The notes beneath the pieces are model-generated. The model ran no database searches, had not been told where the DNA came from, and was given only the letters and a program-made list of their open reading frames with translations. From positions 1-64,000 of the IMG/VR virus record IMGVR_UViG_3300032236_002285: a DNA stretch of 64,000 bases. One strand, written 5' to 3'. Each line of letters starts with the position of its first letter. The stretch's first letter is position 1. Below are positions 6,113 to 63,889 of the stretch, piece after piece. The position numbers and the translations under genes were made by a program.

Positions 6113-6120
6113 AATATATA
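6113..6120 (+). promoter_or_regulatory. Putative late promoter AATATATA
   Basis: Recurring octamer, 5 nt before ATG 6126. Confidence 0.6.
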
Positions 6121-6125
6121 CTCAT

Positions 6126-6890
6126 ATGAAACTTGTAAAATATTTTGAATTTAATCAACAAGATTTAGAACCTATTAAATCTTTTTATCTTAAAGAAGAA
6201 TTAAATCCTAGATTATGGGATGATTTTAAGTTAGATGATGAAGTAAGAGAAGAATTACTTACAATTGCTCAAGATTTTTATGAAAATGTTGAGGCTGGTG
6301 CTGATGTAGTTGATATAGTACTTGCTGGATCTTTATGTAACTATAACTGGTCTGAAAAGTATTCAGATTTTGATTTACATATTATTATTGATTTTGATGA
6401 TGTTGATGAAAACTTTGAATTAGTTGAGAAGTTTTGTGATTATGCTAAAAAGATTTGGAATGAACAACATGATATTAAAATCAAAGGCTATGAAGTTGAA
6501 ATAGCTATTCAAGATAATGATGATTTAGATAAAGCTATTGAAGGTGGTAGAATGGGTGGTGTTTTTTCTTTATTGAAAAATAAATGGATTAAAAGACCAG
6601 AAAGAATAGATTTTGAGCCTGATGAAAAGCTAATAGAAGAAAAATCTAAAACTATTATGATGTCTGTTGATGATATCGAAGAACAATCAGAAGAAGATAA
6701 ATATGAAGCTTTTGATGAAAAGATTTCAAAGGTTTGGAAGAAGATTAAAGATTTTAGACAAAGTGGTTTAGATTCTGAATCTGGCGAGTTTTCAGTTGGT
6801 AACTTAGTATTTAAGTTACTAAGAAGAAATGGGTACATTGGTAAAATAATGGAACTAAAGAGAAAAGTTTACGATAAACAATTTAAGTAA
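6126..6890 (+). CDS. Pol-beta superfamily nucleotidyltransferase with N-terminal CTS-like tag
   Basis: DIVLAGSLCNYNWSEKYSDFDLHIIID (GS...DxD motif), third acidic residue in YEVE. Confidence 0.75.
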   Translation: MKLVKYFEFNQQDLEPIKSFYLKEELNPRLWDDFKLDDEVREELLTIAQDFYENVEAGADVVDIVLAGSLCNYNWSEKYSDFDLHIIIDFDDVDENFELVEKFCDYAKKIWNEQHDIKIKGYEVEIAIQDNDDLDKAIEGGRMGGVFSLLKNKWIKRPERIDFEPDEKLIEEKSKTIMMSVDDIEEQSEEDKYEAFDEKISKVWKKIKDFRQSGLDSESGEFSVGNLVFKLLRRNGYIGKIMELKRKVYDKQFK

Positions 6891-6891
6891 T

Positions 6892-7587
6892 ATGGAAATT
6901 AAAATATCAGAAATAGAACAAGTATTCAAAGATGTCTTTGTTGCTGAAGAAGGTGTAGTAAATACAGTTGAATCTGTATATGAGATGTCAAGAGATGAAG
7001 ATTTCTACAAACTTGTTATCTCTATACATGGTTTATCAACTCAAGATACTTCAATTATACATACTAAGTTTATATTCAAAACAGACTTAAATAAAAGACA
7101 TCTTATTGAAGATTCTTTTATCTATCTATATGATATCAATTGTGTTTATCATAAGATAGAGTTTACAAATGTTGTAGACATGAAAAAGAAAATAGAAGAT
7201 ATTGTTGAATCAAAAAACTTTGGAGAGGATTTGCAAATTCTTTCTGACTTTATTGAAGCTCCAGCTATGTTCTTAAACTATTACATGAGAAGAGATAAGA
7301 TTACGGATTATTCAATATTTGATGTTGAGTATGAACCTAAGTTTAAAACAACTCCTTGTGATAAAACAACATTTGATTTTAAGATTAACATTAATAATAA
7401 TTATAAAATGGAACTATCTATACATAAAATAGATAGAGTTGATGAGGAAGAACTAGATACTTATAAGTTTCAATTTAAGTTTATGGATGAGATTGAAACA
7501 TTTGAAACAGATACTCTTAAAAACCTACACTTCTTTATTGGAGACCATATTGCTAAAATTTTAGATAGAAAATTAAAGAATAAGTAA
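6892..7587 (+). CDS. Hypothetical protein
   Basis: 231-aa ORF in operon, typical codon usage. Confidence 0.7.
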   Translation: MEIKISEIEQVFKDVFVAEEGVVNTVESVYEMSRDEDFYKLVISIHGLSTQDTSIIHTKFIFKTDLNKRHLIEDSFIYLYDINCVYHKIEFTNVVDMKKKIEDIVESKNFGEDLQILSDFIEAPAMFLNYYMRRDKITDYSIFDVEYEPKFKTTPCDKTTFDFKININNNYKMELSIHKIDRVDEEELDTYKFQFKFMDEIETFETDTLKNLHFFIGDHIAKILDRKLKNK

Positions 7588-8243
7588 TGAGATATCTTGA
7601 AAAATTTGTCAATTATTTAAATGAATCAACAGAGGATATAACCGATTTAACTAAAGAAGAGTTAGATGAGTTACTTATTCCTATTACAGATTTAGGTGTT
7701 CAATATACATTTTCACCACCAAGAGTTATCACGGATGGTGAATTTTCTGGATTCAAATCAATGAATATAGTTTTTAGAAACTCTTTTCAATTAGGACCAT
7801 CTGGTGGATATACTGAGCAAATTATTGATGATAAATTCTGGGACTTCTTAGATGAGTTAATAGCTCTTAAAAATCGTTTAGAAAGTTCTAGAGTTTCTAT
7901 TAATACTAACTGGAGACACCACATAGTTGTTACTTTTGTACAAAAAGCCAAAGTTGAAGGTGATTTATTTACAATACAAAAGTTGTATAATGATATGTGT
8001 TTAAGAACTAATGCCGCAAAGAGTGATTTTGTAAATAACATGACTAAGAGTTTAGATAAAGAAAATTTAAAAATTACAGTTAATTGTAATGGTTATAGAG
8101 AGGGTGCTTATACTGATAGAAAGTGGAATGGTCTTTTCAGAGGTATAGATTTTTCTAAATTTAATGTTGAAAAGGATATTACTGAAGATAGATATGGTAT
8201 TAAAAATGCTGTTATTACAATTACTCTTAAAAGTGAATCATAA
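7587..8243 (+). CDS. Hypothetical protein with CTS-like N-terminus (MRYLEKFVNYLNES)
   Basis: ORF coupled to the upstream gene through a TAATG overlap. Confidence 0.7.
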   Translation: MRYLEKFVNYLNESTEDITDLTKEELDELLIPITDLGVQYTFSPPRVITDGEFSGFKSMNIVFRNSFQLGPSGGYTEQIIDDKFWDFLDELIALKNRLESSRVSINTNWRHHIVVTFVQKAKVEGDLFTIQKLYNDMCLRTNAAKSDFVNNMTKSLDKENLKITVNCNGYREGAYTDRKWNGLFRGIDFSKFNVEKDITEDRYGIKNAVITITLKSES

Positions 8244-8280
8244 CATTTAATATATATGTTAATAAAAATATTATAGTAAG

Positions 8281-9720: not shown

Positions 9721-9986
9721 TTCATAAAAGAAATAACCTTATCTAAGTTTTCTCTGTTGAATCCGTCTAATGGTTTTCCGCCACTTTTTAAGTAGTCTCC
9801 GTATAAGTTATTATACTCATCTATTGTGTAGAATCTATTATCTATCTCTGATAATATTACATTTGTATCATGAAAGGTAACAGTTTTGTTTTGTAATCCC
9901 GTCTCTCCATATGCTGGTCCAATTGGTCCTACCAATTCAGTACCAGATACTTCTTCATTAAACTGTTTAAATGATTTAATCTTCAT
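9717..9986 (-). CDS. Small protein with CTS-like N-terminus (MKIKSFKQFNEE)
   Basis: 89-aa ORF carrying the shared N-terminal motif. Confidence 0.7.
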   Translation of the reverse strand: MKIKSFKQFNEEVSGTELVGPIGPAYGETGLQNKTVTFHDTNVILSEIDNRFYTIDEYNNLYGDYLKSGGKPLDGFNRENLDKVISFMN

Positions 9987-10437
9987 TTTCCTTTTCTATT
10001 TTTTCAAAATATTCATCTTGTTCTTCTAATGAATATTCTCTTTTCTTTGTATTATATATTAAATTATAAAGGAACTTATCATGTAGTTTGTGATGCTCAT
10101 CATGAACCATAGTTATGGTACAAGTTTCATCTTCAAAGTTATTTTCTACTTTTATTATTTCCATTCCAAATTTACCATCTTTGTCATGTAAGTTGCAAAT
10201 AACTTTTATTTTTTTCTCTAATAACTCAAGCACTTTATTAAAAGTGGTGTTTTTGGAAAGATATAAAAAGTCTTTCATATCCTCTTTGTTAGTGGATTGA
10301 TATAACTCTAAGAAATCACGCTCTCTTTTAGTTAGTGACTTTTTTTTATAAACCTTTTCTTTTATCTTATTTAATTCCATCTCTTTAACAGATTCGTTTA
10401 GTAGATAATATTTAATAATTCTTTCAAATTTGTTCAT
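9976..10437 (-). CDS. Hypothetical protein (N-terminal ...YLLNES; short 'SLTKRERDFL' helical motif)
   Basis: 153-aa ORF; reverse-strand AATATATA near 10461-10468. Confidence 0.65.
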   Translation of the reverse strand: MNKFERIIKYYLLNESVKEMELNKIKEKVYKKKSLTKRERDFLELYQSTNKEDMKDFLYLSKNTTFNKVLELLEKKIKVICNLHDKDGKFGMEIIKVENNFEDETCTITMVHDEHHKLHDKFLYNLIYNTKKREYSLEEQDEYFEKIEKENED

Positions 10438-10518
10438 ACAAATATAATACTTTCTTACATTATATATTAAGAAGTATTTACTTATTTTATATATACATTG
10501 TAAAATTACACTAAATTA

Positions 10519-13503: not shown

Positions 13504-13532
13504 ACATTTTAAACAATTATTATATAATCTAT

Positions 13533-13982: not shown

Positions 13983-14030
13983 CTAAACTTTTACCACTAC
14001 TCAACTTATAAAATAAAAAATAATTCTAAA

Positions 14031-14462: not shown

Positions 14463-14483
14463 TAAAATAAAAATAAAATTAAT

Positions 14484-21031: not shown

Positions 21032-21124
21032 CTATGGTTATAAACTTTTACATATATATTAATTTATCTTTTCTTAGTAAGTGATTTTAATATATACAAA
21101 TAATGAAAAAATAAACATTTATGT

Positions 21125-24097: not shown

Positions 24098-24166
24098 GTG
24101 TAAAAGGACGGAATTATTTTTTAATATATAGATATATTAGTTTATATTAAAAAAATAAGAATAGTT

Positions 24167-25299: not shown

Positions 25300-25412
25300 A
25301 TACTATTTATTAAATAGTGGAAATGGCATTTTTTACAACATAATATTTTAAAATAGAGCTAAAGAGAGAAAGAAGAAAAATATATAATTTATAAAAAATA
25401 ATTTAAAAAAAT

Positions 25413-27279: not shown

Positions 27280-27350
27280 ATTAATTATTTATTTTTTATT
27301 ATATATTCGTGGGTTTATTATCCCTTGAATTCACCTTATGGTTATAATAA

Positions 27351-31293: not shown

Positions 31294-31354
31294 ATTTTTA
31301 ATATTTTTTTTTATGTTATAGAGTATATATAAAATGTAAAAAATGATATTTTTT

Positions 31355-34797: not shown

Positions 34798-34847
34798 AAA
34801 TTTATGTAATTTTTTCAACTTATATATTAAAAACTATTTACTTAAAA

Positions 34848-34902: not shown

Positions 34903-35370
34903 ATGAAATCTATGAATATTGACATCAACAAAATTGTTCACTTAGAATTGAGAAACAAACACGGTAAAAAGTTTTCTAACACAAGACTTAAATTTATTGC
35001 TGAATTTCTATCAATTAACTCTGATTTTTTGGTTGATTTAAGTGATAAGTATGACAATATCTGGTTTATCAATACTGGTGTTACAACTATGGTATTCGCT
35101 ACCTGTGGTGTATCTTCTTATTCTTTTGAGCCTTTTAGTGTTGGATATGATGTTGTTAGAGATATAAAAGCCATTGAAGTTCCAAAAACTCCACCTCAAA
35201 CTAAAAAATCTAAAGTTGTTAAAACTAATGAAGTTGGTAACGTCTTTATTGAAGATTTGATTGGTGATTTAGATTTAGACGTGGATACTATTCTTGATAA
35301 GATTTCTGCTACTGGTATGGCATCTTTGACCAAGAGAGAATTAGAGTTTTTGAACAGCCTTAATAAATAA
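34903..35370 (+). CDS. Hypothetical (probably early) protein with C-terminal DUF6576-like helix
   Basis: VDTILDKISATGMASLTKRELEFL; start set at ATG 34903. Confidence 0.6.
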   Translation: MKSMNIDINKIVHLELRNKHGKKFSNTRLKFIAEFLSINSDFLVDLSDKYDNIWFINTGVTTMVFATCGVSSYSFEPFSVGYDVVRDIKAIEVPKTPPQTKKSKVVKTNEVGNVFIEDLIGDLDLDVDTILDKISATGMASLTKRELEFLNSLNK

Positions 35371-35424: not shown

Positions 35425-35536
35425 TATTTTAAAATATATTTTTTTTATCCACCTTTGAAATTTTTGTAAATTCCACGATTGTCTTTTTAATAATAAAAAA
35501 ATAGAATATATAAGTCATACAAATTCATATTTTATT

Positions 35537-36321: not shown

Positions 36322-36382
36322 AAATAATATATTTAAGAAATCCCGTTAGAAATGACGGGATTTTTTATTTAATATATACATT

Positions 36383-37509: not shown

Positions 37510-38145
37510 TTATTTATCCTTATCTTTATTTATCATAGCATTCTTAATCAAATCATTCAACTTTCTATTATCCATAATAGCACCTGATGCGTCTTCACTT
37601 GCTGCTTCTTCTGATGCTGCATTTTGAGCTTTAATAACATCTGGATTTTCAATTTCGTTAAGACCTAAGTCTTTTCTCAATCCTTTATAAAACTTTTCAA
37701 GTTCGGTTCTTTGTGTAGATGAGAATTTAGAATTTTCTCTAATTTGACCAATTGTTTGATTGACAACCTCGTGCATTCTAGCAGAGTTATCACCATTATC
37801 AACTTGTCTTAATTGTGATAAGAAGTTCTTTCTTGTCATTTTTTGTAAGAAGATAGTCTCAGCATATACTTTAGCATCTTCTTTCATTTTATTTCTAATA
37901 TAAGGGTGTTCTTTTAATTGAGGTACATCACTTAAATATAAATCAATAAGTGATTCTAATACGTCCATAGACTGTTGTGTTGCAACTGTCATATCTGAGT
38001 CGTAATCATATATTTCTATCTCACCTAAATCTGGTAAATCTTCAGGTCTGGCAAGGTGTTTACTAATATCAAATTCACCACTCTCTGATTGGATTTCATC
38101 GAATTCGTCTTTGATTCTATTTCTTTCATTCTCTGTTTTTGACAT
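37510..38145 (-). CDS. gp16: Terminase small subunit (gp16-like)
   Basis: SARMHEVVNQTIGQ resembles the gp16 PRxxEV motif; divergent from the large terminase; start set at ATG 38145. Confidence 0.6.
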   Translation of the reverse strand: MSKTENERNRIKDEFDEIQSESGEFDISKHLARPEDLPDLGEIEIYDYDSDMTVATQQSMDVLESLIDLYLSDVPQLKEHPYIRNKMKEDAKVYAETIFLQKMTRKNFLSQLRQVDNGDNSARMHEVVNQTIGQIRENSKFSSTQRTELEKFYKGLRKDLGLNEIENPDVIKAQNAASEEAASEDASGAIMDNRKLNDLIKNAMINKDKDK

Positions 38146-38163: not shown

Positions 38164-38173
38164 AATATATATT
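38164..38173. promoter_or_regulatory. Palindromic bidirectional late promoter AATATATATT
   Basis: Only such motif in the 50-nt gap between divergent TerS and TerL. Confidence 0.6.
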
Positions 38174-40340: not shown

Positions 40341-40367
40341 AAAAAAGACACATTTCTGTGTCTTTTT
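40340..40367. terminator. Bidirectional intrinsic terminator
   Basis: AAAAGACACA-TTTC-TGTGTCTTTT. Confidence 0.75.
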
Positions 40368-40369
40368 TA

Positions 40370-40660: not shown

Positions 40661-41191
40661 TTATATATTATTTGAGAAAATAGTTTCTTTTTTGTTAACA
40701 ACATCAACTACTGTAACTTTCACATGATGTTCTTCAGCCCATTCTTCAAACTTAATTAAATGTTCATGTCTATCGTCAAAAAGTATAAACTCATGGACTC
40801 CTAGTTCTTCAATCTTTTCTTCAAATAGTTTAGTTTTGAAGTTATATGTATCACCACCCCAGTTTAAATGTACTTCATCAAATGATAGATTATGTTGGTT
40901 TAGAATACTCATAACATTTTCAAGCATTCCTGTTTTTTTTCTAAGACGACCTGTTGCCAAAATAACATAGTTATCTGGATCTGATACGGCTTCTAAGTAT
41001 TTTTTATAAACCCATTGATTTAATGGTACATAAAATATTTCAGGGTCTATACTTTCTGGTCTACCCCACCAACCACCAAACGGCCAATCAGTTCCAGTTT
41101 TTTCTTTCCAAATTTTTTGACCTTCTTCAGGCTTTGGGGTGTGACAAATTGTATCGTCAAAGTCAAATGATATCAGCCTTTTATAACTCAT
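40661..41191 (-). CDS. HAD phosphatase (RNA-repair 'Swiss army knife'-like)
   Basis: SFDFDDT, WWGRPES, LATGR, FDDRHEH. Confidence 0.7.
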   Translation of the reverse strand: MSYKRLISFDFDDTICHTPKPEEGQKIWKEKTGTDWPFGGWWGRPESIDPEIFYVPLNQWVYKKYLEAVSDPDNYVILATGRLRKKTGMLENVMSILNQHNLSFDEVHLNWGGDTYNFKTKLFEEKIEELGVHEFILFDDRHEHLIKFEEWAEEHHVKVTVVDVVNKKETIFSNNI

Positions 41192-41292
41192 TATTGTAGT
41201 TTATTTTTAAATATTTACAAATATATATAAAATTTTTGAAAATTAAAAGGGTAAATTGAAAAATAATATATATTGCAAAAATAATAAGTTTT

Positions 41293-42221: not shown

Positions 42222-42280
42222 TGTGAAAAAAATGACTTTTTATACTTAATATATAATCTATAAAAAATATTCAAATACAA

Positions 42281-42847: not shown

Positions 42848-42964
42848 TTAATAAAATATTAAAAGAATTAAAACCCATCAAATATTTGATGGGTTTTTTA
42901 TTTAATAAAATTACCATCAATGTGATTATCAATTTTTAATATATATAATAAAAATAAGTTATTT

Positions 42965-43654
42965 ATGAAAGTTTGTTGTTCATGTAAACAGGTAAAAACA
43001 CTTGATTCATTTGGTAAATTAAAATCAAGTAAAGATGGCTATAGACATAATTGTAAAGATTGTAGAAAAATATACTCTATAGATAATAAAGATAAAATTA
43101 AAGAATATAGAAAAGGTTATTATTTATCAAATAAAGAAAAGTGTAATTATAAAAGTAAGCAGTGGTACATAGAAAATATAGAATTCAAAAAAGAATATGA
43201 CAAAGAATATGCTTTAGTAAATAAAGATAAAAGAAGTGAAACTTATAAGAAGTGGAGAAATGATAATATTGATAAAATAAGAGAATATAAAAAAAATTAT
43301 TATCATAATGTTACTACAAAAGATCCTGATAAACTAATTAAAGTTTCTGCTAGGTCTTTAGTTAAGAGATTTATGAAGGTTAAAAATCACAAAACAAATG
43401 AGATAATTGGGTGTTCTTATGAGTATCTAAGATTTTATTTAGAATCTAAATTTGAAAAATGGATGACTTGGGATAATTATGGTTTATATAATGGTGAATT
43501 AAATCATGGGTGGGATATTGATCACATAATACCACTATCGTCTGCTAAAACAGACGAAGAATTAATTAGATTAAATCACTATACTAACTTACAACCTCTT
43601 TGTAGTAAAGTGAATAGAGATATTAAAAATGATAAAATTGATTTTTATATATAG
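42965..43654 (+). mobile_element. HNH-type homing endonuclease
   Basis: N-terminal CxxC...CKDC; WDNYG...WDIDHIIPL...HYTNLQPL. Confidence 0.75.
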
Positions 43655-45845: not shown

Positions 45846-45893
45846 ATTGTCTATATATATAAAATTAATATATACTAAAAATTAATGTGAATT

Positions 45894-46340: not shown

Positions 46341-46344
46341 AAAC

Positions 46345-46370
46345 AAAAACCAGTCATTTGACTGGTTTTT
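46345..46370. terminator. Bidirectional intrinsic terminator
   Basis: AAAACCAGTCA-TT-TGACTGGTTTT. Confidence 0.75.
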
Positions 46371-46743
46371 ATGTTATAACTGCATATACATTATAGTCTG
46401 CTATTTGAAATAGTATCTCCATATATTCCTGATATCTTTCGGGGTCTTCATAAAAGTTAACTTGTAATTGATAAGATATTGAATCTAATTCAGGTATATA
46501 ATTTTTTACTTGATTTCTTAATTCCGCTTCAATTGTTTCGGCTGATAATCTTGTCTCATGTAAATATCTTGGTAAATCTCCGCCAAAATTTGGCTCACAT
46601 AATAATTCACCTCTATTGGTGAATATCATCATCTCCCATTTTTGCACGACAACTTTAACAAGATCATCTTCAATGATTTGAGAATCATTAAATCTTGGGT
46701 GTCCAGTGTATTCAATATAAAAATCTGTAAAGTCAAAAGCCAT
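46369..46743 (-). CDS. gp25: Baseplate wedge subunit / sheath initiator
   Basis: FTNRGELLCEPNFGGDLPRYLHE...YIPEL. Confidence 0.8.
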   Translation of the reverse strand: MAFDFTDFYIEYTGHPRFNDSQIIEDDLVKVVVQKWEMMIFTNRGELLCEPNFGGDLPRYLHETRLSAETIEAELRNQVKNYIPELDSISYQLQVNFYEDPERYQEYMEILFQIADYNVYAVIT

Positions 46744-46775
46744 AACATATATATTAATATATTATGGCTCTTTTG

Positions 46776-47738
46776 TTATAGTAAAATCTCTCTGAATTTA
46801 CCAACTATTGTTAAACCTAAAACAATAGGGTCAGTGTTGGTTTCTAGCTTGGAAGAATAATCAGCAATAATAAAATTACATTCAAATAATTTATCTATAT
46901 TCTTACTCTCTGAGATAGACCAATCAATAAATGGCCTGCCTAATAGTTTAATCATGACATCAATCTTTTCAGCGCCAAAGTTAGTCATTAAAAAGTGATA
47001 TATTTTCTCATAATCTAAAGATTTATCATAGATACAATTGTATAAGTCTGTTTTTACTTTATTAGATACATTTGAAGTATTATCACCAAGACTACCTGTT
47101 TCTAAGTAGTTTTGAACTTCAACCATTATAGACCTAAAGTCTGGAAACTTCTTAGTAATAATAGAAATTAAATCTTCTTTAGGTATTTGTTTACCTTCTT
47201 TAGGTAGAATTACATTATTAATTCTTTTATAAATCTCTTGTTTAAGATATTTCTCTTCTTCAACACCTTGACAATCAAAGTTTATTTGAGGAATTCTTGA
47301 TTTGATTCCATCAGAAATCTTATTTAAGTGATTGGTGGTAATAATGAATCTAACATTCTTATTGTACTTTTCTATAAAAGCTTTGAATGCGTCTTGGAAT
47401 TGAGCAGATACTCTTTCAAACTCATCTAAGAAGATATATTTAATATCAGAATCTGTCTCCATCATTGGTTTGAATTTACAAAAATCTTCTATTTCACTTC
47501 TTAAAACATCAATAGATGTGTATAAAGATGAGTTTAGTTCTAAGTAAGGCTTATCTTTTGTGTACTTACCAACAAGTATTCTAGCTAAGCTAGTTTTACC
47601 AGTTCCAAAGTGACCGTAAAATATAAAGTTTTGATTTATACCATTTTCAAAGTGTTTCTTGATTCTTGGTAAAAGAATAACATCGTCCATATTCTTTGGA
47701 CGCCATTTTTCCCATAAAAGTAAAGATTTAACTGACAT
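46776..47738 (-). CDS. gp44: Sliding clamp loader large subunit (RFC-like AAA+)
   Basis: LWEKWRP, GHFGTGKT, FLDEFE, FIITTN, KSR, FPDFR. Confidence 0.9.
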   Translation of the reverse strand: MSVKSLLLWEKWRPKNMDDVILLPRIKKHFENGINQNFIFYGHFGTGKTSLARILVGKYTKDKPYLELNSSLYTSIDVLRSEIEDFCKFKPMMETDSDIKYIFLDEFERVSAQFQDAFKAFIEKYNKNVRFIITTNHLNKISDGIKSRIPQINFDCQGVEEEKYLKQEIYKRINNVILPKEGKQIPKEDLISIITKKFPDFRSIMVEVQNYLETGSLGDNTSNVSNKVKTDLYNCIYDKSLDYEKIYHFLMTNFGAEKIDVMIKLLGRPFIDWSISESKNIDKLFECNFIIADYSSKLETNTDPIVLGLTIVGKFREILL

Positions 47739-47788
47739 ATTAGGTATATAAATTATTAAGAGAAAGTTTATATTTAATATATACTCGT

Positions 47789-48736: not shown

Positions 48737-48815
48737 TACAACTAATTTAAAAAATGGTAAAAAATGACTTTTTATCTATAATATATAGAGTATATAAAAA
48801 AAAATATTTTAAAAT

Positions 48816-50099: not shown

Positions 50100-50239
50100 T
50101 ATCAAATATTAATAAAATCCTCAAAGAAATTTGAGGATTTTTTATTTTAAAATAAACTTTCATGTTGCATGTATGTATAACATGAAAGCATGAAAAAAAG
50201 GCTCTACTCTTTAGAGACTTAAAAAATAAGTACTTATGA

Positions 50240-50605
50240 ATGTATTTAAATAATAAAGACCTTTATATTGAGGTAATCGTATCAAAAGCACAAGGCAAAC
50301 TAACAAGAAATGCTGAAAAAATGTTAGAACTACTTGCCAAAAAAACAATCAAAAAAATGAGATATTGGTCTAATGATGATAAATTAGACTGCTACCAATC
50401 AGGACTATTAGATATGTTCCAAAACTGGTATAACTTTAATGAAGATAAATCCGTAAATGCTTTCGCATACTTTACAGAGGTATTCAAAAGAGGAATCGCC
50501 AAAGGTTATAACGAACTTTATAAGAAGAAAGGTGATAACGAACACTTAATCAAATTAATTTCAATTGAAGGTTCAAACGATGGACAAGGACTTCACTCAC
50601 TCTAA
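50240..50605 (+). CDS. gp55: Late-transcription sigma factor (gp55-like, minimal)
   Basis: YLNNKDL start; NFNEDKSVNAFAYFTEV sigma region 2 motif. Confidence 0.75.
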   Translation: MYLNNKDLYIEVIVSKAQGKLTRNAEKMLELLAKKTIKKMRYWSNDDKLDCYQSGLLDMFQNWYNFNEDKSVNAFAYFTEVFKRGIAKGYNELYKKKGDNEHLIKLISIEGSNDGQGLHSL

Positions 50606-50729: not shown

Positions 50730-50757
50730 AAAAATCCACTCAATTGAGTGGATTTTT
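50730..50757. terminator. Bidirectional intrinsic terminator
   Basis: AAAATCCACTCAATTGAGTGGATTTT. Confidence 0.75.
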
Positions 50758-53130: not shown

Positions 53131-53144
53131 TTTTATATATAAAA
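53131..53144. promoter_or_regulatory. 14-bp palindrome TTTTATATATAAAA, putative bidirectional late promoter
   Basis: Lies in the 44-nt gap between divergent gp4 and gp2. Confidence 0.55.
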
Positions 53145-53854: not shown

Positions 53855-53887
53855 TAATATATACACTATAAAAAATTAAAACTCTAA

Positions 53888-54361: not shown

Positions 54362-54434
54362 CACCTAATCTGGTTCTGACTTTAGAGGAAGGTTAGAAAT
54401 TTAATATATAAACGAAATAGTTATTTTAAAATAA

Positions 54435-56162: not shown

Positions 56163-56173
56163 AACATATTATA

Positions 56174-56205
56174 AAAAAAGCCTCTCAAAATTGAGAGGCT
56201 TTTTT
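56174..56205. terminator. Bidirectional intrinsic terminator
   Basis: AAAAGCCTCTCAA-AA-TTGAGAGGCTTTT. Confidence 0.8.
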
Positions 56206-58536: not shown

Positions 58537-58551
58537 ATATGAGTATTCTAT

Positions 58552-58947: not shown

Positions 58948-59058
58948 AAAAAACCGCTCAATTTCTTTTATTTATTAAATTTTATTCCTTTCCTCTTGAA
59001 TCTATCTATAAATAATCCTAACTTTTATAAATATGGTTTTCCTTTTAATAAATAGTGT

Positions 59059-59691
59059 ATGGCTTTTAAAAGAAAATGTACTAATTGTTTTTTTATTGGA
59101 ATGGATGATCAATACTTTACAAATAATAAAAAAATTTGTAATACTTGTTTTGATTTAAAATCTGAAGTTAAAATAAAGAAAAAATTAGAATCAAAAATAA
59201 AAAAGAGTGAGTATCTAAAATCTTGGCGATTAAAAAATAAAGAATATCTGAAAAAATATTCAGATAAGTGGATAAGTGAGAATCCTGAGAAAGTTAAAAA
59301 GTACTCAAAAAAAGCGTATTTAAAGAACAAAGAGTCTATAAATGAATATCAAAAATTTTATGTAAAAAAAAGAAGATTGAGTGATCCACTATTTAAATTG
59401 AAAACCAATCTAAGAAATCTAATAAAGAATAGTTTACAAAAACAAGGTTATACTAAAAAATCTAAAACCTATGATATAGTTGGGATATCTTATGATGAAT
59501 TTAGAGAGTATATAGAGAGTCAGTTTACAGATGGTATGTGTTGGGATAATTATGGAGAATGGCACTTAGATCATATAATTCCTATATGTTCTGCTGACTC
59601 TGAATCATCAGCTATTGATTTATGTTATTATAAAAATTTTCAACCATTATGGGCGGTTGATAATCAAACTAAAAGTGGTAAAATTTTATAG
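59059..59691 (+). mobile_element. HNH-type homing endonuclease
   Basis: CTNC...CNTC; DPLFKLK; WDNYGEWHLDHIIP...NFQPLWA..N. Confidence 0.75.
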
Positions 59692-59696
59692 GTTGG

Positions 59697-59745
59697 AACG
59701 TCTAAAATGTTGATTTTTATTTAAAAAATCAACATTTTAGACGTT
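59697..59745. repeat. Perfect 22-bp inverted repeat (hairpin)
   Basis: AACGTCTAAAATGTTGATTTTT-ATTTA-AAAAATCAACATTTTAGACGTT. Confidence 0.9.
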
Positions 59746-59875
59746 TTATTTTTACACACTCTTGAAACAAAATGCCCTGATAGATTACACTCGGTCTGTA
59801 AATAATCCACCTTTGATTTTTTTGAATAAATAAGGTCTTATATATACTCTATATTTTAAAAAATAATAAACTTAA

Positions 59876-62038
59876 ATGAAACCAGTATTAATTATAGAAA
59901 ATTCAACAAACTCTCTTATTAGAGAGAATAATGGTTCACAAAAGAAGGATTATATTTTAGGTGGTACATTCACAGAATTTGGTGTTAAAAACCGTAATGA
60001 AAGAATTTACACTGCTGAGAAATTTCTTCCAGCGTTACAAGAACTAAATGAAAGAATGAGCAGCTTAGGTGTTGTTTATGGTGAGTTTGATCATCCAGAT
60101 GTTTTCGATACATCTCTTTCTAGAGCATCACACATCATTACAAAAGCTAATTATGTTAAAGAGTCAAATCTTGTTAGTGGTGAAATCAGATTATTAAATA
60201 CTTATTGGGGTAGAGAAGCTAAGGCATTGGTCGATGACGGATGTCCTGTTTTTGTTTCTTCAAGAGCAGCTGGTATCACTGAATCAGATGGTACTGTTTC
60301 GTTAAAAAAATTATTCACTTATGATATCGTTGCTGATCCGGGTTTTGCTTCAGCTAAAATGTCTATCAAGACGCTTAATGAATCATTAGGATATAATGAA
60401 AACTCTAACTTTAGGATATATGAAATGTCCGATGAGTCCAAAATAAATCAACTATTTGATATGAACAAAAATGAATTTGTTACAAAGCAACAGTTAACTG
60501 AATATTCTCAGTATTTAGTTAAGGAATTAGCTTCTACTAAAAAAGAAGTTAAAGGTGCTCTTACTAAAGGTAACTTATCTCCAAAGAAAATGGAGCAACT
60601 TTTAGAGTACTATGAAGAGTTAAATTCAACAAATGCTCAAGTTGTTAAATATCTAGATTATTTGGCTGAAAAAGTACAAGTTATGGTTAATGAGAACAAG
60701 TCGTTAAAAGAAACAACTGACAAACTTATTAAGCACAATGACTATTTAGCTGAAAATTTAGAGAAAGCTGTTAACTACTCTGAATATTTAGCTGAAAACT
60801 TAGACAAAAATATTGAGTATTCTGAATACTTAGCTGAGAACTTAGATAAGAACATTTCTTACTCTGAATACATTGCTGAAAACTTAGATAAGAACATTTC
60901 TTACTCTGAATATTTAGCTGAAAACTTAGACAAAAATATCGAATACTCTGAATACTTAGCAGAAAATCTTGATAAGAATATTGCTTATTCAGAATATATC
61001 GCTGAAAACTTAGACAAAAATATTGCATACGCTGAATACATTGCTGAGCACGTTGATAATTCAATTGCTTACTCTGAATACTTAGCAGAACATGTTGAAG
61101 GTAACATTGCTTACTCTGAATACATTGCTGAACATTTAGATGATAACATTGCTTATTCAGAATATATTGCTGAAAATCTTGACAAATCAATTTCATATCA
61201 AGGTTTAATCGTTGAAAAGTTAAATTCTAAAAAATTAAACGAATCAATGAATGAAGAAGATGAGGAAGCTTTCCCATCATTACATGATGCTGGTTTTGAA
61301 GATGCTCACGAAGAAGAAGGTCATGAAGATGCTCACGAAGATGACGAAGAAGATTGTGGTCCAATGGGTCATGAAGAAGAAGGTCATGAAGAAGAAGCTC
61401 ACGAAGACGTTCACGAAAATAAAGAAGAAGATGACGAAGAAGATTGCGGTCCAATGAGTCATGAAGAAGAAGGACATGAAGATGAAGAAGAAGAAAACTG
61501 GGAAGTTAAAGGTAACAGCGATTCTGAATTATCTGAGTCAATAAATAAATTAATTGAAGAAGCTAAAAAACGTAAAGTTTCTGAAAATAGTGATTTGAAT
61601 TTCTTAAAATTCTTAAACAAATCACAAGTAGATAGTTTCTATGCTTTGTCTGATGAAGACCAAGAGGCTGTTAAATTTCACATAAGCGAAAGAAATTACT
61701 TCACATCTAAAGATGTGTTAAGCCTAATCGCAGAAGCACTATCATCTAAGAATGAATCTCTTGAAGAAAGAGTTATCAGATTAATGCCTGAAAACACTAA
61801 GGCTATCTGGAGTCAAATGAATGAATCTGCTAAAAAATCTATCTTATCACAAGCTAGACTTTACCCAGCTGAAGTTTTAATGACTGAATCACAAATTGAA
61901 CATTTCTGGTTAACTAGAAATTTCAAGAAAAACGAATCTGTAACTAAAAAGTTAGTAGCTCATGAAAGTTTAATACAAGAAGATAAACTTTCTGATAATG
62001 ACGTTACTGCGATTATGGAAAGATTCAAAAACATCTAA
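59876..62038 (+). CDS. gp21: Prohead protease fused to scaffold/core protein (gp21+gp22-like)
   Basis: KNRNERIY, GEFDHP, ASHII, VSSRAAG, YDIVADPGF, followed by coiled-coil repeats and an acidic tract; directly upstream of the MCP. Confidence 0.9.
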   Translation: MKPVLIIENSTNSLIRENNGSQKKDYILGGTFTEFGVKNRNERIYTAEKFLPALQELNERMSSLGVVYGEFDHPDVFDTSLSRASHIITKANYVKESNLVSGEIRLLNTYWGREAKALVDDGCPVFVSSRAAGITESDGTVSLKKLFTYDIVADPGFASAKMSIKTLNESLGYNENSNFRIYEMSDESKINQLFDMNKNEFVTKQQLTEYSQYLVKELASTKKEVKGALTKGNLSPKKMEQLLEYYEELNSTNAQVVKYLDYLAEKVQVMVNENKSLKETTDKLIKHNDYLAENLEKAVNYSEYLAENLDKNIEYSEYLAENLDKNISYSEYIAENLDKNISYSEYLAENLDKNIEYSEYLAENLDKNIAYSEYIAENLDKNIAYAEYIAEHVDNSIAYSEYLAEHVEGNIAYSEYIAEHLDDNIAYSEYIAENLDKSISYQGLIVEKLNSKKLNESMNEEDEEAFPSLHDAGFEDAHEEEGHEDAHEDDEEDCGPMGHEEEGHEEEAHEDVHENKEEDDEEDCGPMSHEEEGHEDEEEENWEVKGNSDSELSESINKLIEEAKKRKVSENSDLNFLKFLNKSQVDSFYALSDEDQEAVKFHISERNYFTSKDVLSLIAEALSSKNESLEERVIRLMPENTKAIWSQMNESAKKSILSQARLYPAEVLMTESQIEHFWLTRNFKKNESVTKKLVAHESLIQEDKLSDNDVTAIMERFKNI
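60733..61200 (+). repeat. Coding tandem repeat, 42 nt / 14 aa (YSEY[LI]AENLDKNI[AES]), 10 full copies plus degenerate flanks
   Basis: Read directly in the translation of 59876..62038. Confidence 0.95.
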
Positions 62039-62114
62039 TCTATAAAAAATCCACACTTACGAAAATCAAGTAAATAAAGGGTTATATATAGATCATAAAA
62101 AAAAATAAAAAATT

Positions 62115-63809
62115 ATGTCACACATTAGAATAGACAAAACAAAAGCAGTTAAGAAATGGGCTCCTGTATTGGAGAACATGGGCGTTGCTGCTGATAGAGT
62201 TGAATGGATGTCAGAAATGGCTGAGTATCACTCAATCAATGAAAACGCATATGTAAATGCTTCTAACGTAGCAGGTATGGGTAGTGTATTGAATCCAGTT
62301 GTTGGTTCATTAGCTGGTAACCCAGGTAACTACACAAATGCTTACGGTAACGTAGCAGGTTCTGGCGACGTAGGTCAAAACTTACTTCCAGTAGCTATGA
62401 AAATCGCGGGTCAAACTATCGGTTTAGACTTAGTAGCTGTTAAACCAACTCCTGGTCCAAAAATCGATTTGTTATATATCGACTTCCAATATGACGATAT
62501 TAACACATCATCAAATGAAAGACCACAAGTTTTCAAATTGACTTGTGATAACGTAGCAGCTATCGAAGCAGCTATTACTTCTGATCTTTCTGGTTATTCA
62601 ATTAATCAAAGTCAAGGTGGTTTACAAGGTGGTAGAGTATTCTACGGTATTACTGCATCTAGCGTTTATAAAACAACAACTGAACCAGGTACTAAAACAA
62701 ACATCGTTGAGTTCTTAGGTTTCTCTCGTGTTGATGGTTTACCAATGTTCAGAGCTTACAGACAAAATAACTCTACAGCAGTAGGTGCTTATAATAACAC
62801 TTTTGACGCAACTAAAAACACTTTTGACCAAACTAGTCCAATAGTTTCTCAAATTTTAAGTATCTCTGGTGTAACTCCAACAGCTAACTCTAATAAAGCA
62901 GTTCAATTAGTATCTGCTCTTGAAGATCATCTTCCTGGTTTCTCTGCAAACTGGACATCTTCTACAGGTGCTGCTTCTGGTAACTACCCAATGGGTCGTC
63001 AAGCAGATGATGACAGCTATGCTGGTGTTATCGGTCCAAAAATTTCTTCTAAAACTGTTGCAGTTGGTACTATTGAAGTATCTTCAGCTCTTAGAAGAAC
63101 TGAAATTGAAGATATCAAAGCTAATACAGGTATGGATATCGTTCAAAAAATGGAATCAATCCTTGTTAACGAACTTTCTCAAACAATCTCTAAACAAATT
63201 GTTGCTAAAGTATTCGAAATGGGTGATTTGAACAGAACAGGCGCTCCTGCTTCTTCTGCAACTGCTAACCCTAACTCACTTTCAGGTTGGACAATTTTTG
63301 ACTTGGATACTGCATACGCATCTAACCAAGTTGGTGGTGAAACAACTCACGCTGTTCAACGTAAGTTGATCACTAAGATTGCTCACGCTTCTAACTATAT
63401 CGCAACTGAAGGTCGTGTTGGTCCTGCTCAATACCTTATCACAAACGGAGGTCTTGCTGCCGCTTTACAAGATATCGCTGGTTATACAATTAACCCAGTT
63501 AAATCTAAATTAAACGGTCAAGGTCAACTTTATCCAGTTGGTTCAATCGGAGATATCTCTATCTATGTAGATCCATATCAAAGATACAACGATAATAGAA
63601 TCGTTCTTGGTAGAAAAAACAACCCAGATCAACCAGGTATCATTTTCGTACCTTACTTGATGGCTCAGTCTATCTCAGTTATCTCTGAAGCTACATTCGC
63701 TCCACGTATGTTACTTCGTTCAAGATACGCTGTAACTGAAGTTGGTTGGTACCCACACAAGCAATACATGACTATTAAAGTTAATGATGCTGCTCAATTA
63801 CTTAACTAA
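62115..63809 (+). CDS. gp23: Major capsid protein
   Basis: KKWAPVLE, QTIGLDLVAVKP, IYVDPY, GIIFVPY, TFAPRMLLRSRYA; probable processing site SINE near residue 43. Confidence 0.93.
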   Translation: MSHIRIDKTKAVKKWAPVLENMGVAADRVEWMSEMAEYHSINENAYVNASNVAGMGSVLNPVVGSLAGNPGNYTNAYGNVAGSGDVGQNLLPVAMKIAGQTIGLDLVAVKPTPGPKIDLLYIDFQYDDINTSSNERPQVFKLTCDNVAAIEAAITSDLSGYSINQSQGGLQGGRVFYGITASSVYKTTTEPGTKTNIVEFLGFSRVDGLPMFRAYRQNNSTAVGAYNNTFDATKNTFDQTSPIVSQILSISGVTPTANSNKAVQLVSALEDHLPGFSANWTSSTGAASGNYPMGRQADDDSYAGVIGPKISSKTVAVGTIEVSSALRRTEIEDIKANTGMDIVQKMESILVNELSQTISKQIVAKVFEMGDLNRTGAPASSATANPNSLSGWTIFDLDTAYASNQVGGETTHAVQRKLITKIAHASNYIATEGRVGPAQYLITNGGLAAALQDIAGYTINPVKSKLNGQGQLYPVGSIGDISIYVDPYQRYNDNRIVLGRKNNPDQPGIIFVPYLMAQSISVISEATFAPRMLLRSRYAVTEVGWYPHKQYMTIKVNDAAQLLN

Positions 63810-63829
63810 TTTGAGTTACCAAATATTGA

Positions 63830-63855
63830 AAAAAGACCCTTTATGGGTCTTTTTT
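63830..63855 (+). terminator. Intrinsic terminator after the MCP gene
   Basis: AAAAGACCC-TTTAT-GGGTCTTTT. Confidence 0.8.
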
Positions 63856-63889
63856 CTTTTTAAACAATTTTGAATTTAATATATACTTT

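What the first reader, a model, noticed from the sequence alone, without database searches (positions are those of the whole stretch)
6113..63885. Genome-wide late promoter AATATATA, a variant of T4 TATAAATA
Seen: (A/T)ATATATA precedes most structural and tagged genes. On + it occurs at 6113, 21089, 35505, 36371, 42248, 42938, 43646, 45867, 47776, 48780, 59839, 62083 and 63878. On - it occurs near 10461, 21053, 31324, 34821, 45852 and 46748. Known: T4 gp55 recognises the -10-only octamer TATAAATA. Inference: the minimal gp55 at 50240 has shifted specificity, and each scattered structural gene has its own promoter.
Basis: partly seen in the sequence, partly recalled or inferred. Interest (0 to 1): 0.6.

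Follow-up and report, generated by a model that had tools for sequence, protein, structure and literature searches.

The report
Late-gene promoter of a huge phage
A strict eight-base signal, (A/T)ATATATA, sits just upstream of about a quarter of the genes of this 476 kb Bacteroidota-type phage, mainly virion genes; it is most likely the phage's own version of the T4 late promoter, and nearly half of these genes appear to be made as leaderless mRNAs.

Summary
All 19 listed sites exist, and about a dozen more in the window were missed. In the whole 476 kb genome, 233 of 285 copies lie in the 7% that is non-coding. AATATATA is the commonest 8-mer upstream of genes. It is strand-specific (53 sense, 3 antisense) and nearly absent between convergent genes. 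Orthologous upstream regions in relatives of 73-86% DNA identity almost always keep it.

Where PHROG gave a function, it precedes virion genes and not replication genes (Fisher p about 1e-5). RNR and some nucleases are exceptions.

The 121-aa protein at 50240 belongs to the gp55 family by sequence and by fold. No phage RNA polymerase was found by Pfam.

More distant phages carrying this short sigma show AATAAATA (XacN1, Lak) or TATACATA (PAU) in the same geometry. The change is at octamer position 5.

New points:
- The distance to the ATG is bimodal, 4-6 nt or 17-30 nt. An A lies 5 nt after the motif, which implies a fixed start site and about 75 leaderless late mRNAs.
- The self-complementary TATATATA serves divergent gene pairs.

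No start site, timing or binding has been measured. This is a new variant of a known kind.

The parts
6113..6120 (+). AATATATA, 5 nt before ATG 6126 (254 aa, phrog_36119, unknown function); leaderless-type
8249..8256 (+). AATATATA, 24 nt before ATG 8281 (479 aa, unknown)
10461..10468 (-). AATATATA, 23 nt before ATG 10437 (gene 9976-10437)
10488..10495 (+). TATATATA, 23 nt before ATG 10519 (994 aa, unknown)
21053..21060 (-). AATATATA, 21 nt before ATG 21031 (1943 aa protein, no PHROG hit)
21089..21096 (+). AATATATA, 28 nt before ATG 21125 (377 aa)
24123..24130 (+). AATATATA, 36 nt before ATG 24167 (endonuclease, phrog_4645)
25379..25386 (+). AATATATA, 26 nt before ATG 25413 (tail tube)
27300..27307 (-). 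AATATATA, 20 nt before ATG 27279 (312 aa)
31324..31331 (-). TATATATA, 30 nt before ATG 31293 (tail sheath, 1296 aa)
34821..34828 (-). AATATATA, 23 nt before ATG 34797. This is the likelier start of the 960-aa gene; the TTG at 34818 is only 2 nt from the motif.
35505..35512 (+). AATATATA, 24 nt before ATG 35537
36371..36378 (+). AATATATA, 4 nt before ATG 36383; leaderless-type
38164..38173 (.). 10-bp palindrome AATATATATT that gives the motif on both strands. Plus strand: 24 nt before terminase large subunit (ATG 38196). Minus strand: 20 nt before ATG 38145.
40662..40669 (-). AATATATA, 7 nt before ATG 40654 (94 aa)
41222..41229 (-). TATATATA, 30 nt before ATG 41191 (176 aa)
41265..41272 (+). 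AATATATA, 20 nt before ATG 41293
42248..42255 (+). AATATATA, 25 nt before ATG 42281; kept in 22 of 22 distinct orthologous upstream regions
42938..42947 (+). AATATATATA, 17-19 nt before ATG 42965 (endonuclease VII-like)
43646..43653 (+). TATATATA, 4 nt before ATG 43658; leaderless-type. 13 of 21 distinct orthologous upstreams keep the motif, 12 of them at spacer 4.
45852..45861 (-). TATATATATA, 6-8 nt before ATG 45845 (362 aa)
45867..45874 (+). AATATATA, 19 nt before ATG 45894
46748..46755 (-). AATATATA, 4 nt before ATG 46743 (baseplate wedge); leaderless-type; motif kept in 30 of 30 relatives
47776..47783 (+). AATATATA, 5 nt before ATG 47789; motif kept in 34 of 34 relatives (28 with a 4-6 nt spacer, 6 with 20-25 nt)
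48780..48787 (+). AATATATA, 28 nt before ATG 48816; kept in 31 of 31 relatives
53134..53141 (.). One palindromic TATATATA shared by divergent genes: head-closure protein (minus strand, 19 nt) and gene 53159 (plus strand, 17 nt)
53856..53863 (+). AATATATA, 24 nt before ATG 53888; kept in 21 of 21 relatives
54403..54410 (+). AATATATA, 24 nt before ATG 54435 (portal); kept in 19 of 19 relatives
59839..59846 (+). TATATATA, 29 nt before ATG 59876 (prohead protease); kept in 20 of 20 relatives
62083..62090 (+). TATATATA, 24 nt before ATG 62115 (gp23-type major capsid protein)
63878..63885 (+). AATATATA, 4 nt before ATG 63890 (228-aa gene that runs past the window end); leaderless-type
50240..50605 (+). 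121-aa gp55-family late sigma (sigma region-2 fold with a disordered conserved C-terminal tail); the proposed reader of the motif
50157..50188 (+). Regulatory region specific to the gp55 gene. A 10-nt perfect inverted repeat, CTTTCATGTT/AACATGAAAG, encloses the one-mismatch octamer TATGTATA (50172-50179).

Best explanation
(A/T)ATATATA is the only sequence-specific element of this phage's late promoters. Host RNA polymerase core carrying the phage's 121-aa gp55-family sigma (50240-50605) reads it as a -10-type box at about -12 to -5. Transcription starts at the A five bases downstream. The promoters drive mainly virion genes, many as single-gene units closed by hairpin terminators.

There are two architectures:
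- About 91 genes have a short A-rich leader of 17-30 nt without a Shine-Dalgarno sequence.
- About 75 genes have the ATG at the predicted start site, so their mRNA would be leaderless.

Because TATATATA is its own reverse complement, one box can serve two divergent genes.

Early and replication genes instead tend to use the host Bacteroidota sigma-A box, TAnnTTTG.

Shown: the motif statistics, geometry, conservation, gene association, and the gp55 family and fold of the sigma. Inferred: late timing, the start site, leaderless translation, and which protein reads the box.
For: - Enrichment, strand bias and position.
- Bimodal spacer: peaks at 4-5 nt (59 hits) and at 17-26 nt, with none at 10-13 nt.
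- Start-site inference: A at the 5th base after the motif in 81 of 98 leadered sites. This is the position of the A of the ATG in the short class, usually preceded by T.
- The same 4-5 nt box-to-start spacing is documented for flavobacterial sigma-A -7 boxes (PMC6847099, PMC9723704).
- Conservation: the exact motif is kept in 19/19 to 34/34 distinct orthologous upstream regions of relatives, where flanking columns agree only about 70%. Genes without the motif stay without it (0/14, 0/19). Some orthologues switch between 4-6 nt and 20-25 nt spacers yet keep the box.
- Function: 10 PHROG-annotated structural genes carry the motif and none lacks it. Non-structural genes: 3-5 with the motif, 19 without (Fisher p 4e-6 to 2e-5).
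- Sigma identity: phrog_234 E 4e-6. BLASTP to T4 gp55 E 7e-4, collinear. A profile of 29 homologues gives T4 gp55 (7d7c_F) as best PDB hit. The AF2 model (pLDDT 83) has gp55 as best fold match, TM 0.75, followed by sigma-E region 2 bound to -10 DNA.
- T4 promoter-pocket residues N13, F86, Y97 and T99 are conserved.
- No phage RNA polymerase found by Pfam.
- Comparative: XacN1 has AATAAATA, 8 of 9 copies before ORF starts, spacers 5, 6 and 22-32. PAU has TATACATA, 6 of 6. LR756504 and LR756501 have wATATATA with the same bimodal spacing.
Against: - No start site, expression timing or protein-DNA binding was measured. The RNA runs found were assembled contigs of relatives and cannot show 5' ends; some cross the protease-capsid spacer.
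- gp33 and gp45 homologues were not detected by PHROG or Pfam profiles, although a clamp loader is present. The T4 activation mechanism may therefore not apply.
- The genome encodes a second, ECF-like sigma.
- Some non-virion genes carry the motif: RNR large subunit, endonuclease VII-like and another endonuclease.
- Most large motif-bearing proteins have no annotation, so the function test rests on about 34 genes.
- The gp55 gene itself has a late-like box, which complicates a simple early-sigma, late-promoter cascade.
Confidence: 0.7

Rival explanations
1. The octamer is a promoter, but a different factor reads it. Candidates are the phage's ECF-like sigma (genome 209428-210216) or host sigma-A re-targeted by a phage protein. 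On this view the gp55-like protein does something else.
For: - A 262-aa sigma with a Sigma70_r2 match (61.8 bits) and a phrog_1740 match exists in a non-motif operon.
- The octamer occupies the same -12 to -5 register as the host TAnnTTTG box and shares A(-11), T(-8) and T(-6) with it.
- gp33 and gp45 were not found.
Against: - ECF sigmas normally need a -35 element plus a CGT-type -10 element. No second conserved element is present here.
- No tblastn hit for that ECF-like sigma was listed in XacN1, pT24 or PAU. These phages still show T4-like single-octamer motifs and carry the short gp55.
- The host box's nearly invariant T(-7) and G(-5) are both A here, and single-base variants of the octamer are at background.
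- The gp55-like protein keeps the T4 residues that hold the flipped -10 bases.
Confidence: 0.17
2. The octamer acts at the RNA level, as a translation enhancer, an RNase processing site or an mRNA stability element, and not as a promoter.
For: - It lies very close to start codons in a host group that lacks Shine-Dalgarno sequences. Only 5 of 616 genes have an SD-like core.
- Many copies are only 4-5 nt from the ATG.
Against: - The distance to the ATG is bimodal and variable (4-6 nt or 17-36 nt), and it switches class between orthologues while the box is kept.
- Its fixed partner is an A five bases downstream, not the ATG.
- One palindromic copy serves divergent genes.
- It marks first genes of units and follows terminator hairpins.
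- It parallels T4-type boxes in related phages that have a gp55 homologue.
Confidence: 0.05
3. It is a compositional by-product: TA-rich low-complexity sequence that accumulates in AT-rich spacers.
For: The genome is 30% GC and its spacers 26% GC.
Against: - z about 20 against a Markov null trained on the same upstream windows.
- 53 sense against 3 antisense; 1 copy in 10 kb-strands of convergent spacers.
- Single-base variants are at background.
- The exact motif is retained across relatives of 73-86% DNA identity.
Confidence: 0.01

Closest known systems
Bacteriophage T4 late promoters (TATAAATA) read by the gp55-gp33-gp45 system
   Same: - A single 8-bp TATA-type box about one helical turn from the start, with no -35 element and an AT-rich downstream region (PMC2988020).
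- Placed before head, tail and packaging genes.
- A gp55-family sigma is encoded. It has the same region-2 fold and keeps the pocket residues N13, F86, Y97 and T99.
- 6 of 8 octamer positions are identical for AATATATA, and 7 of 8 for TATATATA.
   Different: - Position 5 (T4 -9, a base flipped into a gp55 pocket) is T instead of A. Position 1 is mostly A.
- The inferred start lies 5 nt after the box, against 6 nt in T4.
- The sigma is 121 aa against 185 aa, so its C-terminal region is much shorter and does not align with T4's.
- gp33 and gp45 were not detectable.
- The host is a Bacteroidota-type cell without Shine-Dalgarno sequences.
- About 45% of the units look leaderless.
- The palindromic form works in both directions.
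'Minimal sigma factor' of group 2.2 jumbo phages (Iyer et al. 2021, PMC7824862), including Lak megaphages, XacN1, PAU and pT24
   Same: The same protein family (tblastn 30-56% identity). The same genome type: gp23-type capsid, no phage RNAP, plus a second fuller sigma. In my 40-kb samples these phages also show a single octamer before ORF starts with similar spacing.
   Different: Their octamers are AATAAATA (XacN1, Lak-C1, probably pT24) or TATACATA (PAU). The clade of this window (with LR756504 and LR756501) uses wATATATA. I found no published promoter consensus for these phages in the library searched.
Bacteroidota sigma-A promoter, -7 box TAnnTTTG with a weak -33 TTTG
   Same: An eight-base box at -12 to -5 with 4-5 nt to the start site, followed by short A-rich leaders without SD (PMC6847099, PMC9723704). 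The phage itself carries such boxes before many genes that lack the motif: 52 sense against 14 antisense.
   Different: T(-7) and G(-5), nearly invariant in host promoters, are both A here. The two motif classes mark different gene sets. Hosts have only about 5.5% leaderless mRNAs, against about 45% here.
Leaderless phage transcripts. Lavysh et al. (PMC5312081) state that phage transcripts are often leaderless. From memory, not checked here: Thermus phage P23-45 middle and late genes.
   Same: A -10-type promoter placed so that the start site coincides with the A of the AUG.
   Different: Here the pattern is predicted only. It concerns a gp55-type late regulon in a host phylum where leaderless mRNAs are rare, and it coexists with a leadered class driven by the same box.

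Membership tests
T4-type late promoter (gp55-dependent) | A single conserved TATA-type octamer with no -35 element | tested here: met
   Eight-position box with 7 invariant positions. Upstream information content is 0.36 bits or less; only a TT at -1/-2 and a weak A at -18 stand out. Single-base variants are at background.
T4-type late promoter (gp55-dependent) | The octamer sequence is TATAAATA | tested here: not met
   The consensus is (A/T)ATATATA. TATAAATA itself is not enriched in the window (21 against 17 expected). AATAAATA is only mildly enriched in the genome (30 sense, 7 antisense).
T4-type late promoter (gp55-dependent) | The box lies about 10 bp upstream of the mapped transcription start | not testable with these tools
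   The start is inferred only, from the A 5 nt downstream and the 4-5 nt ATG class. The RNA data were contigs without 5' ends.
T4-type late promoter (gp55-dependent) | It drives late (virion, packaging) genes | tested here: met
   Association by annotation: capsid, protease, portal, terminase, head closure, sheath, tube, baseplate wedge and 2 fibres carry it. Polymerase, helicases, topoisomerase, clamp loader and SbcCD do not (Fisher test). Timing itself was not measured. RNR and nucleases are exceptions.
T4-type late promoter (gp55-dependent) | Co-activator gp33 and sliding clamp gp45 are present | tested here: not met
   phrog_254, phrog_223, PF09116, PF02916 and PF00712 gave no match at E <= 1 in the 476 kb genome. 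A gp44-like clamp loader is present, so a divergent clamp may have been missed.
gp55 late sigma family (PHROG 234) | Sequence similarity to gp55 over the sigma region-2-like core | tested here: met
   phrog_234 E 4.3e-6 over residues 2-86. BLASTP to T4 gp55: 24% identity over 111 aa, E 7e-4. The profile's best PDB hit is 7d7c_F gp55, E 0.007. Weak Sigma70_r2 match, E 0.01.
gp55 late sigma family (PHROG 234) | gp55 fold | tested here: met
   AF2 model with pLDDT 82.9 and four helices. Foldseek top hit is 7d7c_F: probability 1.00, TM 0.75, E 4e-3. The next hits are sigma-E region 2 bound to -10 DNA.
gp55 late sigma family (PHROG 234) | Residues that hold the flipped -12, -9 and -8 bases (T4 N13, H95, Y97, T99, F86) | tested here: inconclusive
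   N5, F66, Y77 and T79 align with N13, F86, Y97 and T99. H95 is F75. That F is also present in the homologues whose phages show AATAAATA, so it does not explain the change.
gp55 late sigma family (PHROG 234) | C-terminal region that aligns with T4 gp55 (T4's carries an HLH motif, PMC7892883) | tested here: not met
   The protein ends at residue 121, against 185 in T4, and the C-terminal regions do not align. Residues 98-121 are predicted disordered but end in a conserved SNDGxGLHS(L/I). Its function is unknown.
Bacteroidota sigma-A promoter | -7 box TAnnTTTG (T-12, A-11, T-8, T-7, T-6, G-5) | tested here: not met
   The octamer has A at -7 and at -5. TAnnTTTG marks the other gene class (PMC6847099).
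Leaderless mRNA | The 5' end lies at, or within a few nt of, an AUG start codon | not testable with these tools
   Predicted for about 75 genes from the 4-6 nt spacer and the common A(+1) position. The pattern recurs in LR756504 (spacers 4, 4, 4, 5, 5) and XacN1 (5, 6).

The most novel reading that the evidence does not exclude
A whole clade of freshwater huge phages that infect Bacteroidota has re-tuned the T4-type late promoter by one base, position 5 A to T. This makes the box self-complementary.

A minimal 121-aa gp55, acting without recognisable gp33 or gp45, would then fire compact and often bidirectional promoters. Nearly half of their transcripts would be leaderless. That is a mode of late-gene expression rare in the host phylum, and it may give phage late mRNAs a translation route independent of host leader signals.

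The sigma gene itself sits behind a late-like box caged in a palindrome, which suggests a gated positive-feedback switch.
Probability: 0.4. Interest if true: 0.65.

Novelty: new variant of a known kind. Interest (0 to 1): 0.5.

Why it matters
Huge phages of Bacteroidota are uncultured and largely unannotated. About 87% of PHROG families have no function, and most large motif-bearing proteins here have no PHROG hit at all.

- **Annotation.** A strict, easily scanned late-promoter box marks about 167 genes of this genome as probable late or virion genes. It also fixes their start codons and delimits transcription units. The same logic transfers to hundreds of related contigs.
- **Specificity.** The comparative series is T4, XacN1 and Lak with A, PAU with C, and this clade with T at one octamer position. 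It is a natural experiment on how a region-2-only sigma reads single-stranded -10 DNA.
- **Translation.** The predicted leaderless late regulon bears on how translation starts in a phylum without Shine-Dalgarno pairing.
- **Tools.** The box and its 121-aa sigma could become an orthogonal expression switch for Bacteroidota.

Tried and rejected
- **H95-to-F idea.** I asked whether the T4 H95 to F75 change (H95 contacts the -9 base) explains A to T at position 5. Rejected: F is shared by the XacN1, Lak, pT24 and PAU homologues, whose phages show A or C there.
- **First structure model.** The first AF2 run used 13 near-identical sequences and gave pLDDT 54. It was not used. phmmer of the single protein against PDB found nothing. 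A broader alignment solved both problems.
- **RNA evidence.** All 24 runs were Logan contigs of roughly 90%-identical relatives from freshwater and estuary metatranscriptomes. They show no 5' ends, and some contigs span the protease-capsid spacer.
- **gp45, gp33, beta-clamp.** Profile searches of the genome found nothing.
- **Phage RNA polymerases.** Pfam Rpb2_6 and Rpb1_2 found nothing. The T7-type model rang in no control genome, so that search is uninformative.
- **Sigma-70 consensus scan.** Not enriched: 121 found, 119 expected.
- **gp55 leader structure.** RNAalifold gave no consensus because the alignment was poor. Single-sequence folds were used instead.
- **Literature.** No paper in the library links AATATATA to a phage promoter.
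- **Not run.** Complex prediction was not used because I make no binding claim between named proteins. The large representative-protein search was not used because the protein was not left open.
- **Genetic code.** The window's genome uses the standard code (stops TAA 485, TGA 83, TAG 48). Only for ORF calling in the comparator Lak-C1 did my scripts treat TAG as sense. This rests on my recollection that Lak phages recode TAG, which I did not verify here.

Full report
**What the window is.**
The window is the first 64 kb of a 476,236-bp virus record. The genome is 29.9% GC and uses the standard code, with stops TAA 485, TGA 83 and TAG 48. My greedy ORF caller gives 616 genes covering 92.6% of the sequence. 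The nearest named relatives are the 634-642 kb "uncultured phage" genomes LR745206 and LR756502. These come from the Mahaphage clade, whose largest members were predicted to infect Bacteroidetes (PMC7162821). The sequence itself points the same way. Only 5 of 616 genes have a Shine-Dalgarno-like core. The Bacteroidota sigma-A box TAnnTTTG is enriched in sense orientation before genes that lack the motif studied here: 52 of 158 sense, 14 antisense. E. coli-type sigma-70 promoters are not enriched. The window is a T4-like virion module. It encodes a gp23-type capsid protein, prohead protease, portal, large terminase, head-closure protein, sheath, tube and baseplate wedge.

**The observation.**
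The window has 49 matches against 27 +/- 7 in shuffles. In total, 32 of 64 window genes have the box within 45 nt upstream, against 4.4 +/- 1.9 expected. One further copy, at 63878, precedes a gene that leaves the window.

Genome-wide figures:
- 233 of 285 copies lie in the 7.4% non-coding DNA.
- AATATATA is the commonest 8-mer upstream of genes, present before 131 of 616.
- In co-directional spacers it occurs 53 times in sense and 3 times in antisense.
- Convergent spacers hold one copy.
- 72% of all AATATATA copies in the genome are upstream-sense.
- Almost every one-base variant sits at background, so seven positions are effectively invariant.
- The extended consensus is TT-(A/T)ATATATA-(C/A).
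- T4's own TATAAATA is not enriched in the window.

**Geometry and the inferred start site.**
The distance from the last A of the box to the ATG is sharply bimodal. There are 40 copies at 4 nt, 19 at 5 and 8 at 6. None fall at 10-13 nt. A broad second peak lies at 17-26 nt. In the long class, the fifth base after the box is A in 81 of 98 sites and begins an A-rich run. In the short class, that same position is the A of the ATG. The base before it is usually T.

The simplest reading is one start site, the A five bases downstream. That puts the box at about -12 to -5. This is the register and the 4-5 nt spacing reported for flavobacterial -7 boxes (PMC6847099, PMC9723704). It is one base closer than in T4, if T4's TATAAATA is taken as -13 to -6. 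That numbering follows from PMC2988020 and PMC7892883, which place the bases at -13/-12 and at -12, -9 and -8.

It follows that about 75 genes would be transcribed as leaderless mRNAs and about 91 with short SD-less leaders. Leaders of 5-12 nt, too short for either initiation mode, are avoided. Hosts of this phylum have only about 5.5% leaderless mRNAs. This start-site step is an inference; no 5' ends were available.

**Conservation.**
Eighty contigs that encode a 93-100% identical sigma share only 73-86% DNA identity with window 40-60 kb. I counted distinct orthologous upstream regions that keep the exact box:

| Downstream gene | Box kept |
|---|---|
| 42281 | 22 of 22 |
| 46369 (baseplate wedge) | 30 of 30 |
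| 47789 | 34 of 34 |
| 48816 | 31 of 31 |
| 52587 (head closure) | 34 of 36 |
| 53159 | 25 of 25 |
| 53888 | 21 of 21 |
| portal | 19 of 19 |
| prohead protease | 20 of 20 |

Two genes without the box stay without it: 0 of 14 and 0 of 19. Flanking columns agree only about 70%. That per-column profile is anchored on the motif, so only the retention counts are independent evidence. Several orthologues switch between a 4-6 nt and a 20-25 nt spacer while keeping the box. This fits a promoter and argues against a translation signal.

**Which genes carry it.**
I combined the window with the 18 longest motif-bearing genes and the 20 longest promoter-bearing non-motif genes elsewhere in the genome.
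- PHROG assigns 10 motif-bearing genes to head, tail, connector or packaging.
- It assigns no non-motif gene to those categories.
- Non-motif genes include DNA polymerase, DnaB-like and other helicases, topoisomerase II, SbcC, SbcD, clamp loader, nucleases, both sigma genes and a glycosyltransferase.
- Fisher's test gives p 4e-6 to 2e-5, depending on how weak hits are counted.
- Exceptions carrying the box are the RNR large subunit (genome 92971), an endonuclease VII-like protein and another endonuclease.
- Most large motif-bearing proteins have no PHROG hit.

Terminator-like hairpins are four-fold enriched and lie between units.

ORF 50240-50605 (121 aa) matches phrog_234, "late sigma transcription factor", at E 4e-6. 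It aligns collinearly with T4 gp55 at 24% identity, E 7e-4. It belongs to a large, tightly conserved family of 119-136-aa proteins found on huge-phage contigs up to 770 kb.
- A profile of 29 homologues finds T4 gp55 (7d7c_F) as its best hit in the PDB.
- With that alignment, AlphaFold gives a confident four-helix model (pLDDT 83).
- The model's best Foldseek match is again gp55 in the T4 late open complex: probability 1.00, TM 0.75.
- The next matches are sigma-E region 2 bound to its -10 element.
- The T4 residues shown to hold the flipped promoter bases or needed for open-complex formation (N13, F86, Y97, T99; PMC7892883) are conserved as N5, F66, Y77 and T79.
- The protein is 64 residues shorter than T4 gp55, and the C-terminal regions do not align. 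It ends in a disordered but conserved tail, SNDGxGLHS(L/I).

Pfam found no multisubunit phage RNA polymerase. Neither gp33 nor gp45 could be detected, although Iyer et al. report gp33 orthologues in this phage group. Iyer et al. also describe a "minimal sigma" plus a fuller sigma as typical of group 2 jumbo phages, Lak included. This genome has both. The second is an ECF-like 262-aa protein at 209428-210216, inside a non-motif operon.

**Comparison across phages with this sigma.**
I sampled 40 kb around each homologue and ran the same upstream k-mer analysis.

| Phage | Sigma identity to window | Octamer found | Placement |
|---|---|---|---|
| LR756504 | 56% | wATATATA | spacers 4, 4, 4, 5, 5 and 17-25 |
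| LR756501 (735 kb) | 45% | wATATATA | spacers 5, 10 and 17-25 (plus four at 47-60) |
| XacN1 (49% GC) | 32% | AATAAATA or TATAAATA | 8 of 9 copies before ORF starts, including portal and baseplate genes; spacers 5, 6 and 22-32 |
| Lak-C1 | 40% | wATAAATA | 18 of 35 copies before ORF starts; spacers 18-33 for most |
| pT24 | 36% | ATAAATA, weakly | 8 sense, 1 antisense |
| PAU | 30% | TATACATA | 6 of 6 copies before ORF starts, including portal |

These are small samples. The tempting explanation, T4 H95 to F at the residue touching -9, fails because all these homologues have F. No tblastn hit for the ECF-like sigma was listed in XacN1, pT24 or PAU.

**Consequences of the T at position 5.**
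TATATATA and AATATATATT are self-complementary, which T4's TATAAATA is not. About ten single boxes lie in correct register for two divergent genes:
- 53134 serves head closure and gene 53159.
- 38164-38173 serves terminase and gene 37510-38145.
- At genome 139688, a 15-nt spacer holds one box and two leaderless-type starts.

**The sigma gene's own control region.**
The window's gp55 gene has no exact box. Sixty nt upstream lies TATGTATA, one mismatch from the consensus. It is enclosed by a perfect 10-nt inverted repeat, CTTTCATGTT/AACATGAAAG. The core TATAACATGAA is found at this locus in the genome's non-coding DNA and otherwise only once, inside a gene. It is kept upstream of gp55 in most relatives, and in 16 of 44 the octamer there is a perfect wATATATA. 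A short hairpin of variable sequence precedes a conserved TTAAAAAAT in the leader; 24 of 29 relatives fold better than shuffles. RNAalifold found no consensus on a poor alignment. This looks like gated autoregulation, but that is speculation.

**What was not achieved.**
The single RNA search returned only assembled contigs of relatives from freshwater and estuary metatranscriptomes. They show that capsid and protease sequences of the clade occur in RNA libraries. They say nothing about starts, strands or timing.

**Verdict.**
The feature is real and strong. It is best explained as the late-promoter box of a gp55-type system adapted to a Bacteroidota host. It is a new sequence variant of a known kind of promoter. 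I found no description of it in the searched literature. The predicted leaderless half of the regulon, the bidirectional use of the palindromic box and the position-5 series across phages are the parts worth an experiment.

Noticed in passing
window 50114-50239: Upstream of the gp55-like gene lie four elements. First, a terminator-like hairpin (50114-50141). Second, a perfect 10-nt inverted repeat, CTTTCATGTT/AACATGAAAG, that encloses the one-mismatch late-like octamer TATGTATA (50172-50179). Third, a short leader hairpin. Fourth, a conserved TTAAAAAAT. The core TATAACATGAA is the only non-coding copy in the genome, yet it is conserved in relatives, 16 of 44 of which have a perfect wATATATA there.
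   Followed up: partly
genome 209428-210216 (L090:1237-2025), outside the window: A second phage sigma, ECF-like, 262 aa (Sigma70_r2 61.8 bits; phrog_1740). It sits in an operon without the motif. Homologues occur in Mahaphage, Lak and crAss-like phages; none was listed in XacN1, pT24 or PAU. Its promoters are unknown.
   Followed up: partly
whole genome; in the window e.g. upstream of 34903-35370: The host-type Bacteroidota -7 box TAnnTTTG is enriched in sense orientation before genes lacking the late box (52 of 158 sense, 14 antisense). Only 5 of 616 genes have an SD-like core. This indicates a two-class promoter layout and a Bacteroidota host.
   Followed up: partly
window 38164-38173 and 53134-53141; genome 139688, 315262, 348010 and others: Single palindromic boxes (TATATATA or AATATATATT) lie in correct register for two divergent genes. 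At 139688 the whole spacer is 15 nt, with leaderless-type starts on both sides.
   Followed up: partly
genome 92971-95517 (L101): The ribonucleotide reductase large subunit carries the late-type box 24 nt upstream. It is a clear non-structural exception to the virion-gene rule.
   Followed up: no
window 59007-59014 and 59026-59033: Two exact T4-type TATAAATA octamers lie 19 nt apart, upstream of an endonuclease VII/HNH-like gene (59059-59691). This gene lacks the wATATATA box and has no orthologue in the related loci, so it may be a mobile nuclease with foreign signals.
   Followed up: no
window 1-2679: The window opens inside a collagen-repeat tail-fibre gene with a C-terminal endosialidase-chaperone domain. 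This explains the 39% GC of the first 4 kb. It is phage DNA, not host flank, so IMG/VR's 'provirus' label for the record looks doubtful.
   Followed up: partly
window 50531-50602 (residues 98-121 of the gp55-like protein): The C-terminal tail is predicted disordered but ends in a conserved SNDGxGLHS(L/I). More distant homologues end in similar hydrophobic-x-S/N-hydrophobic tails. It may be a docking peptide for an unknown partner, perhaps a clamp.
   Followed up: no
window 40341-40368, 42870-42897, 46343-46372, 50730-50757, 59698-59744: Terminator-like hairpins followed by T-runs are four-fold enriched (22 found, 5.4 expected). They lie between transcription units, and several are bidirectional.
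   Followed up: no
window 46776-47738 (-): A gp44-like clamp loader is present, but no sliding clamp could be found by T4, bacterial-beta or PHROG profiles. A very divergent clamp probably hides among the unannotated neighbours.
   Followed up: partly
window 59874-63757: Contigs about 85-99% identical to the protease and capsid genes occur in freshwater, lake and estuary metatranscriptome runs from at least four studies. Relatives of this phage are therefore widespread in such waters.
   Followed up: partly
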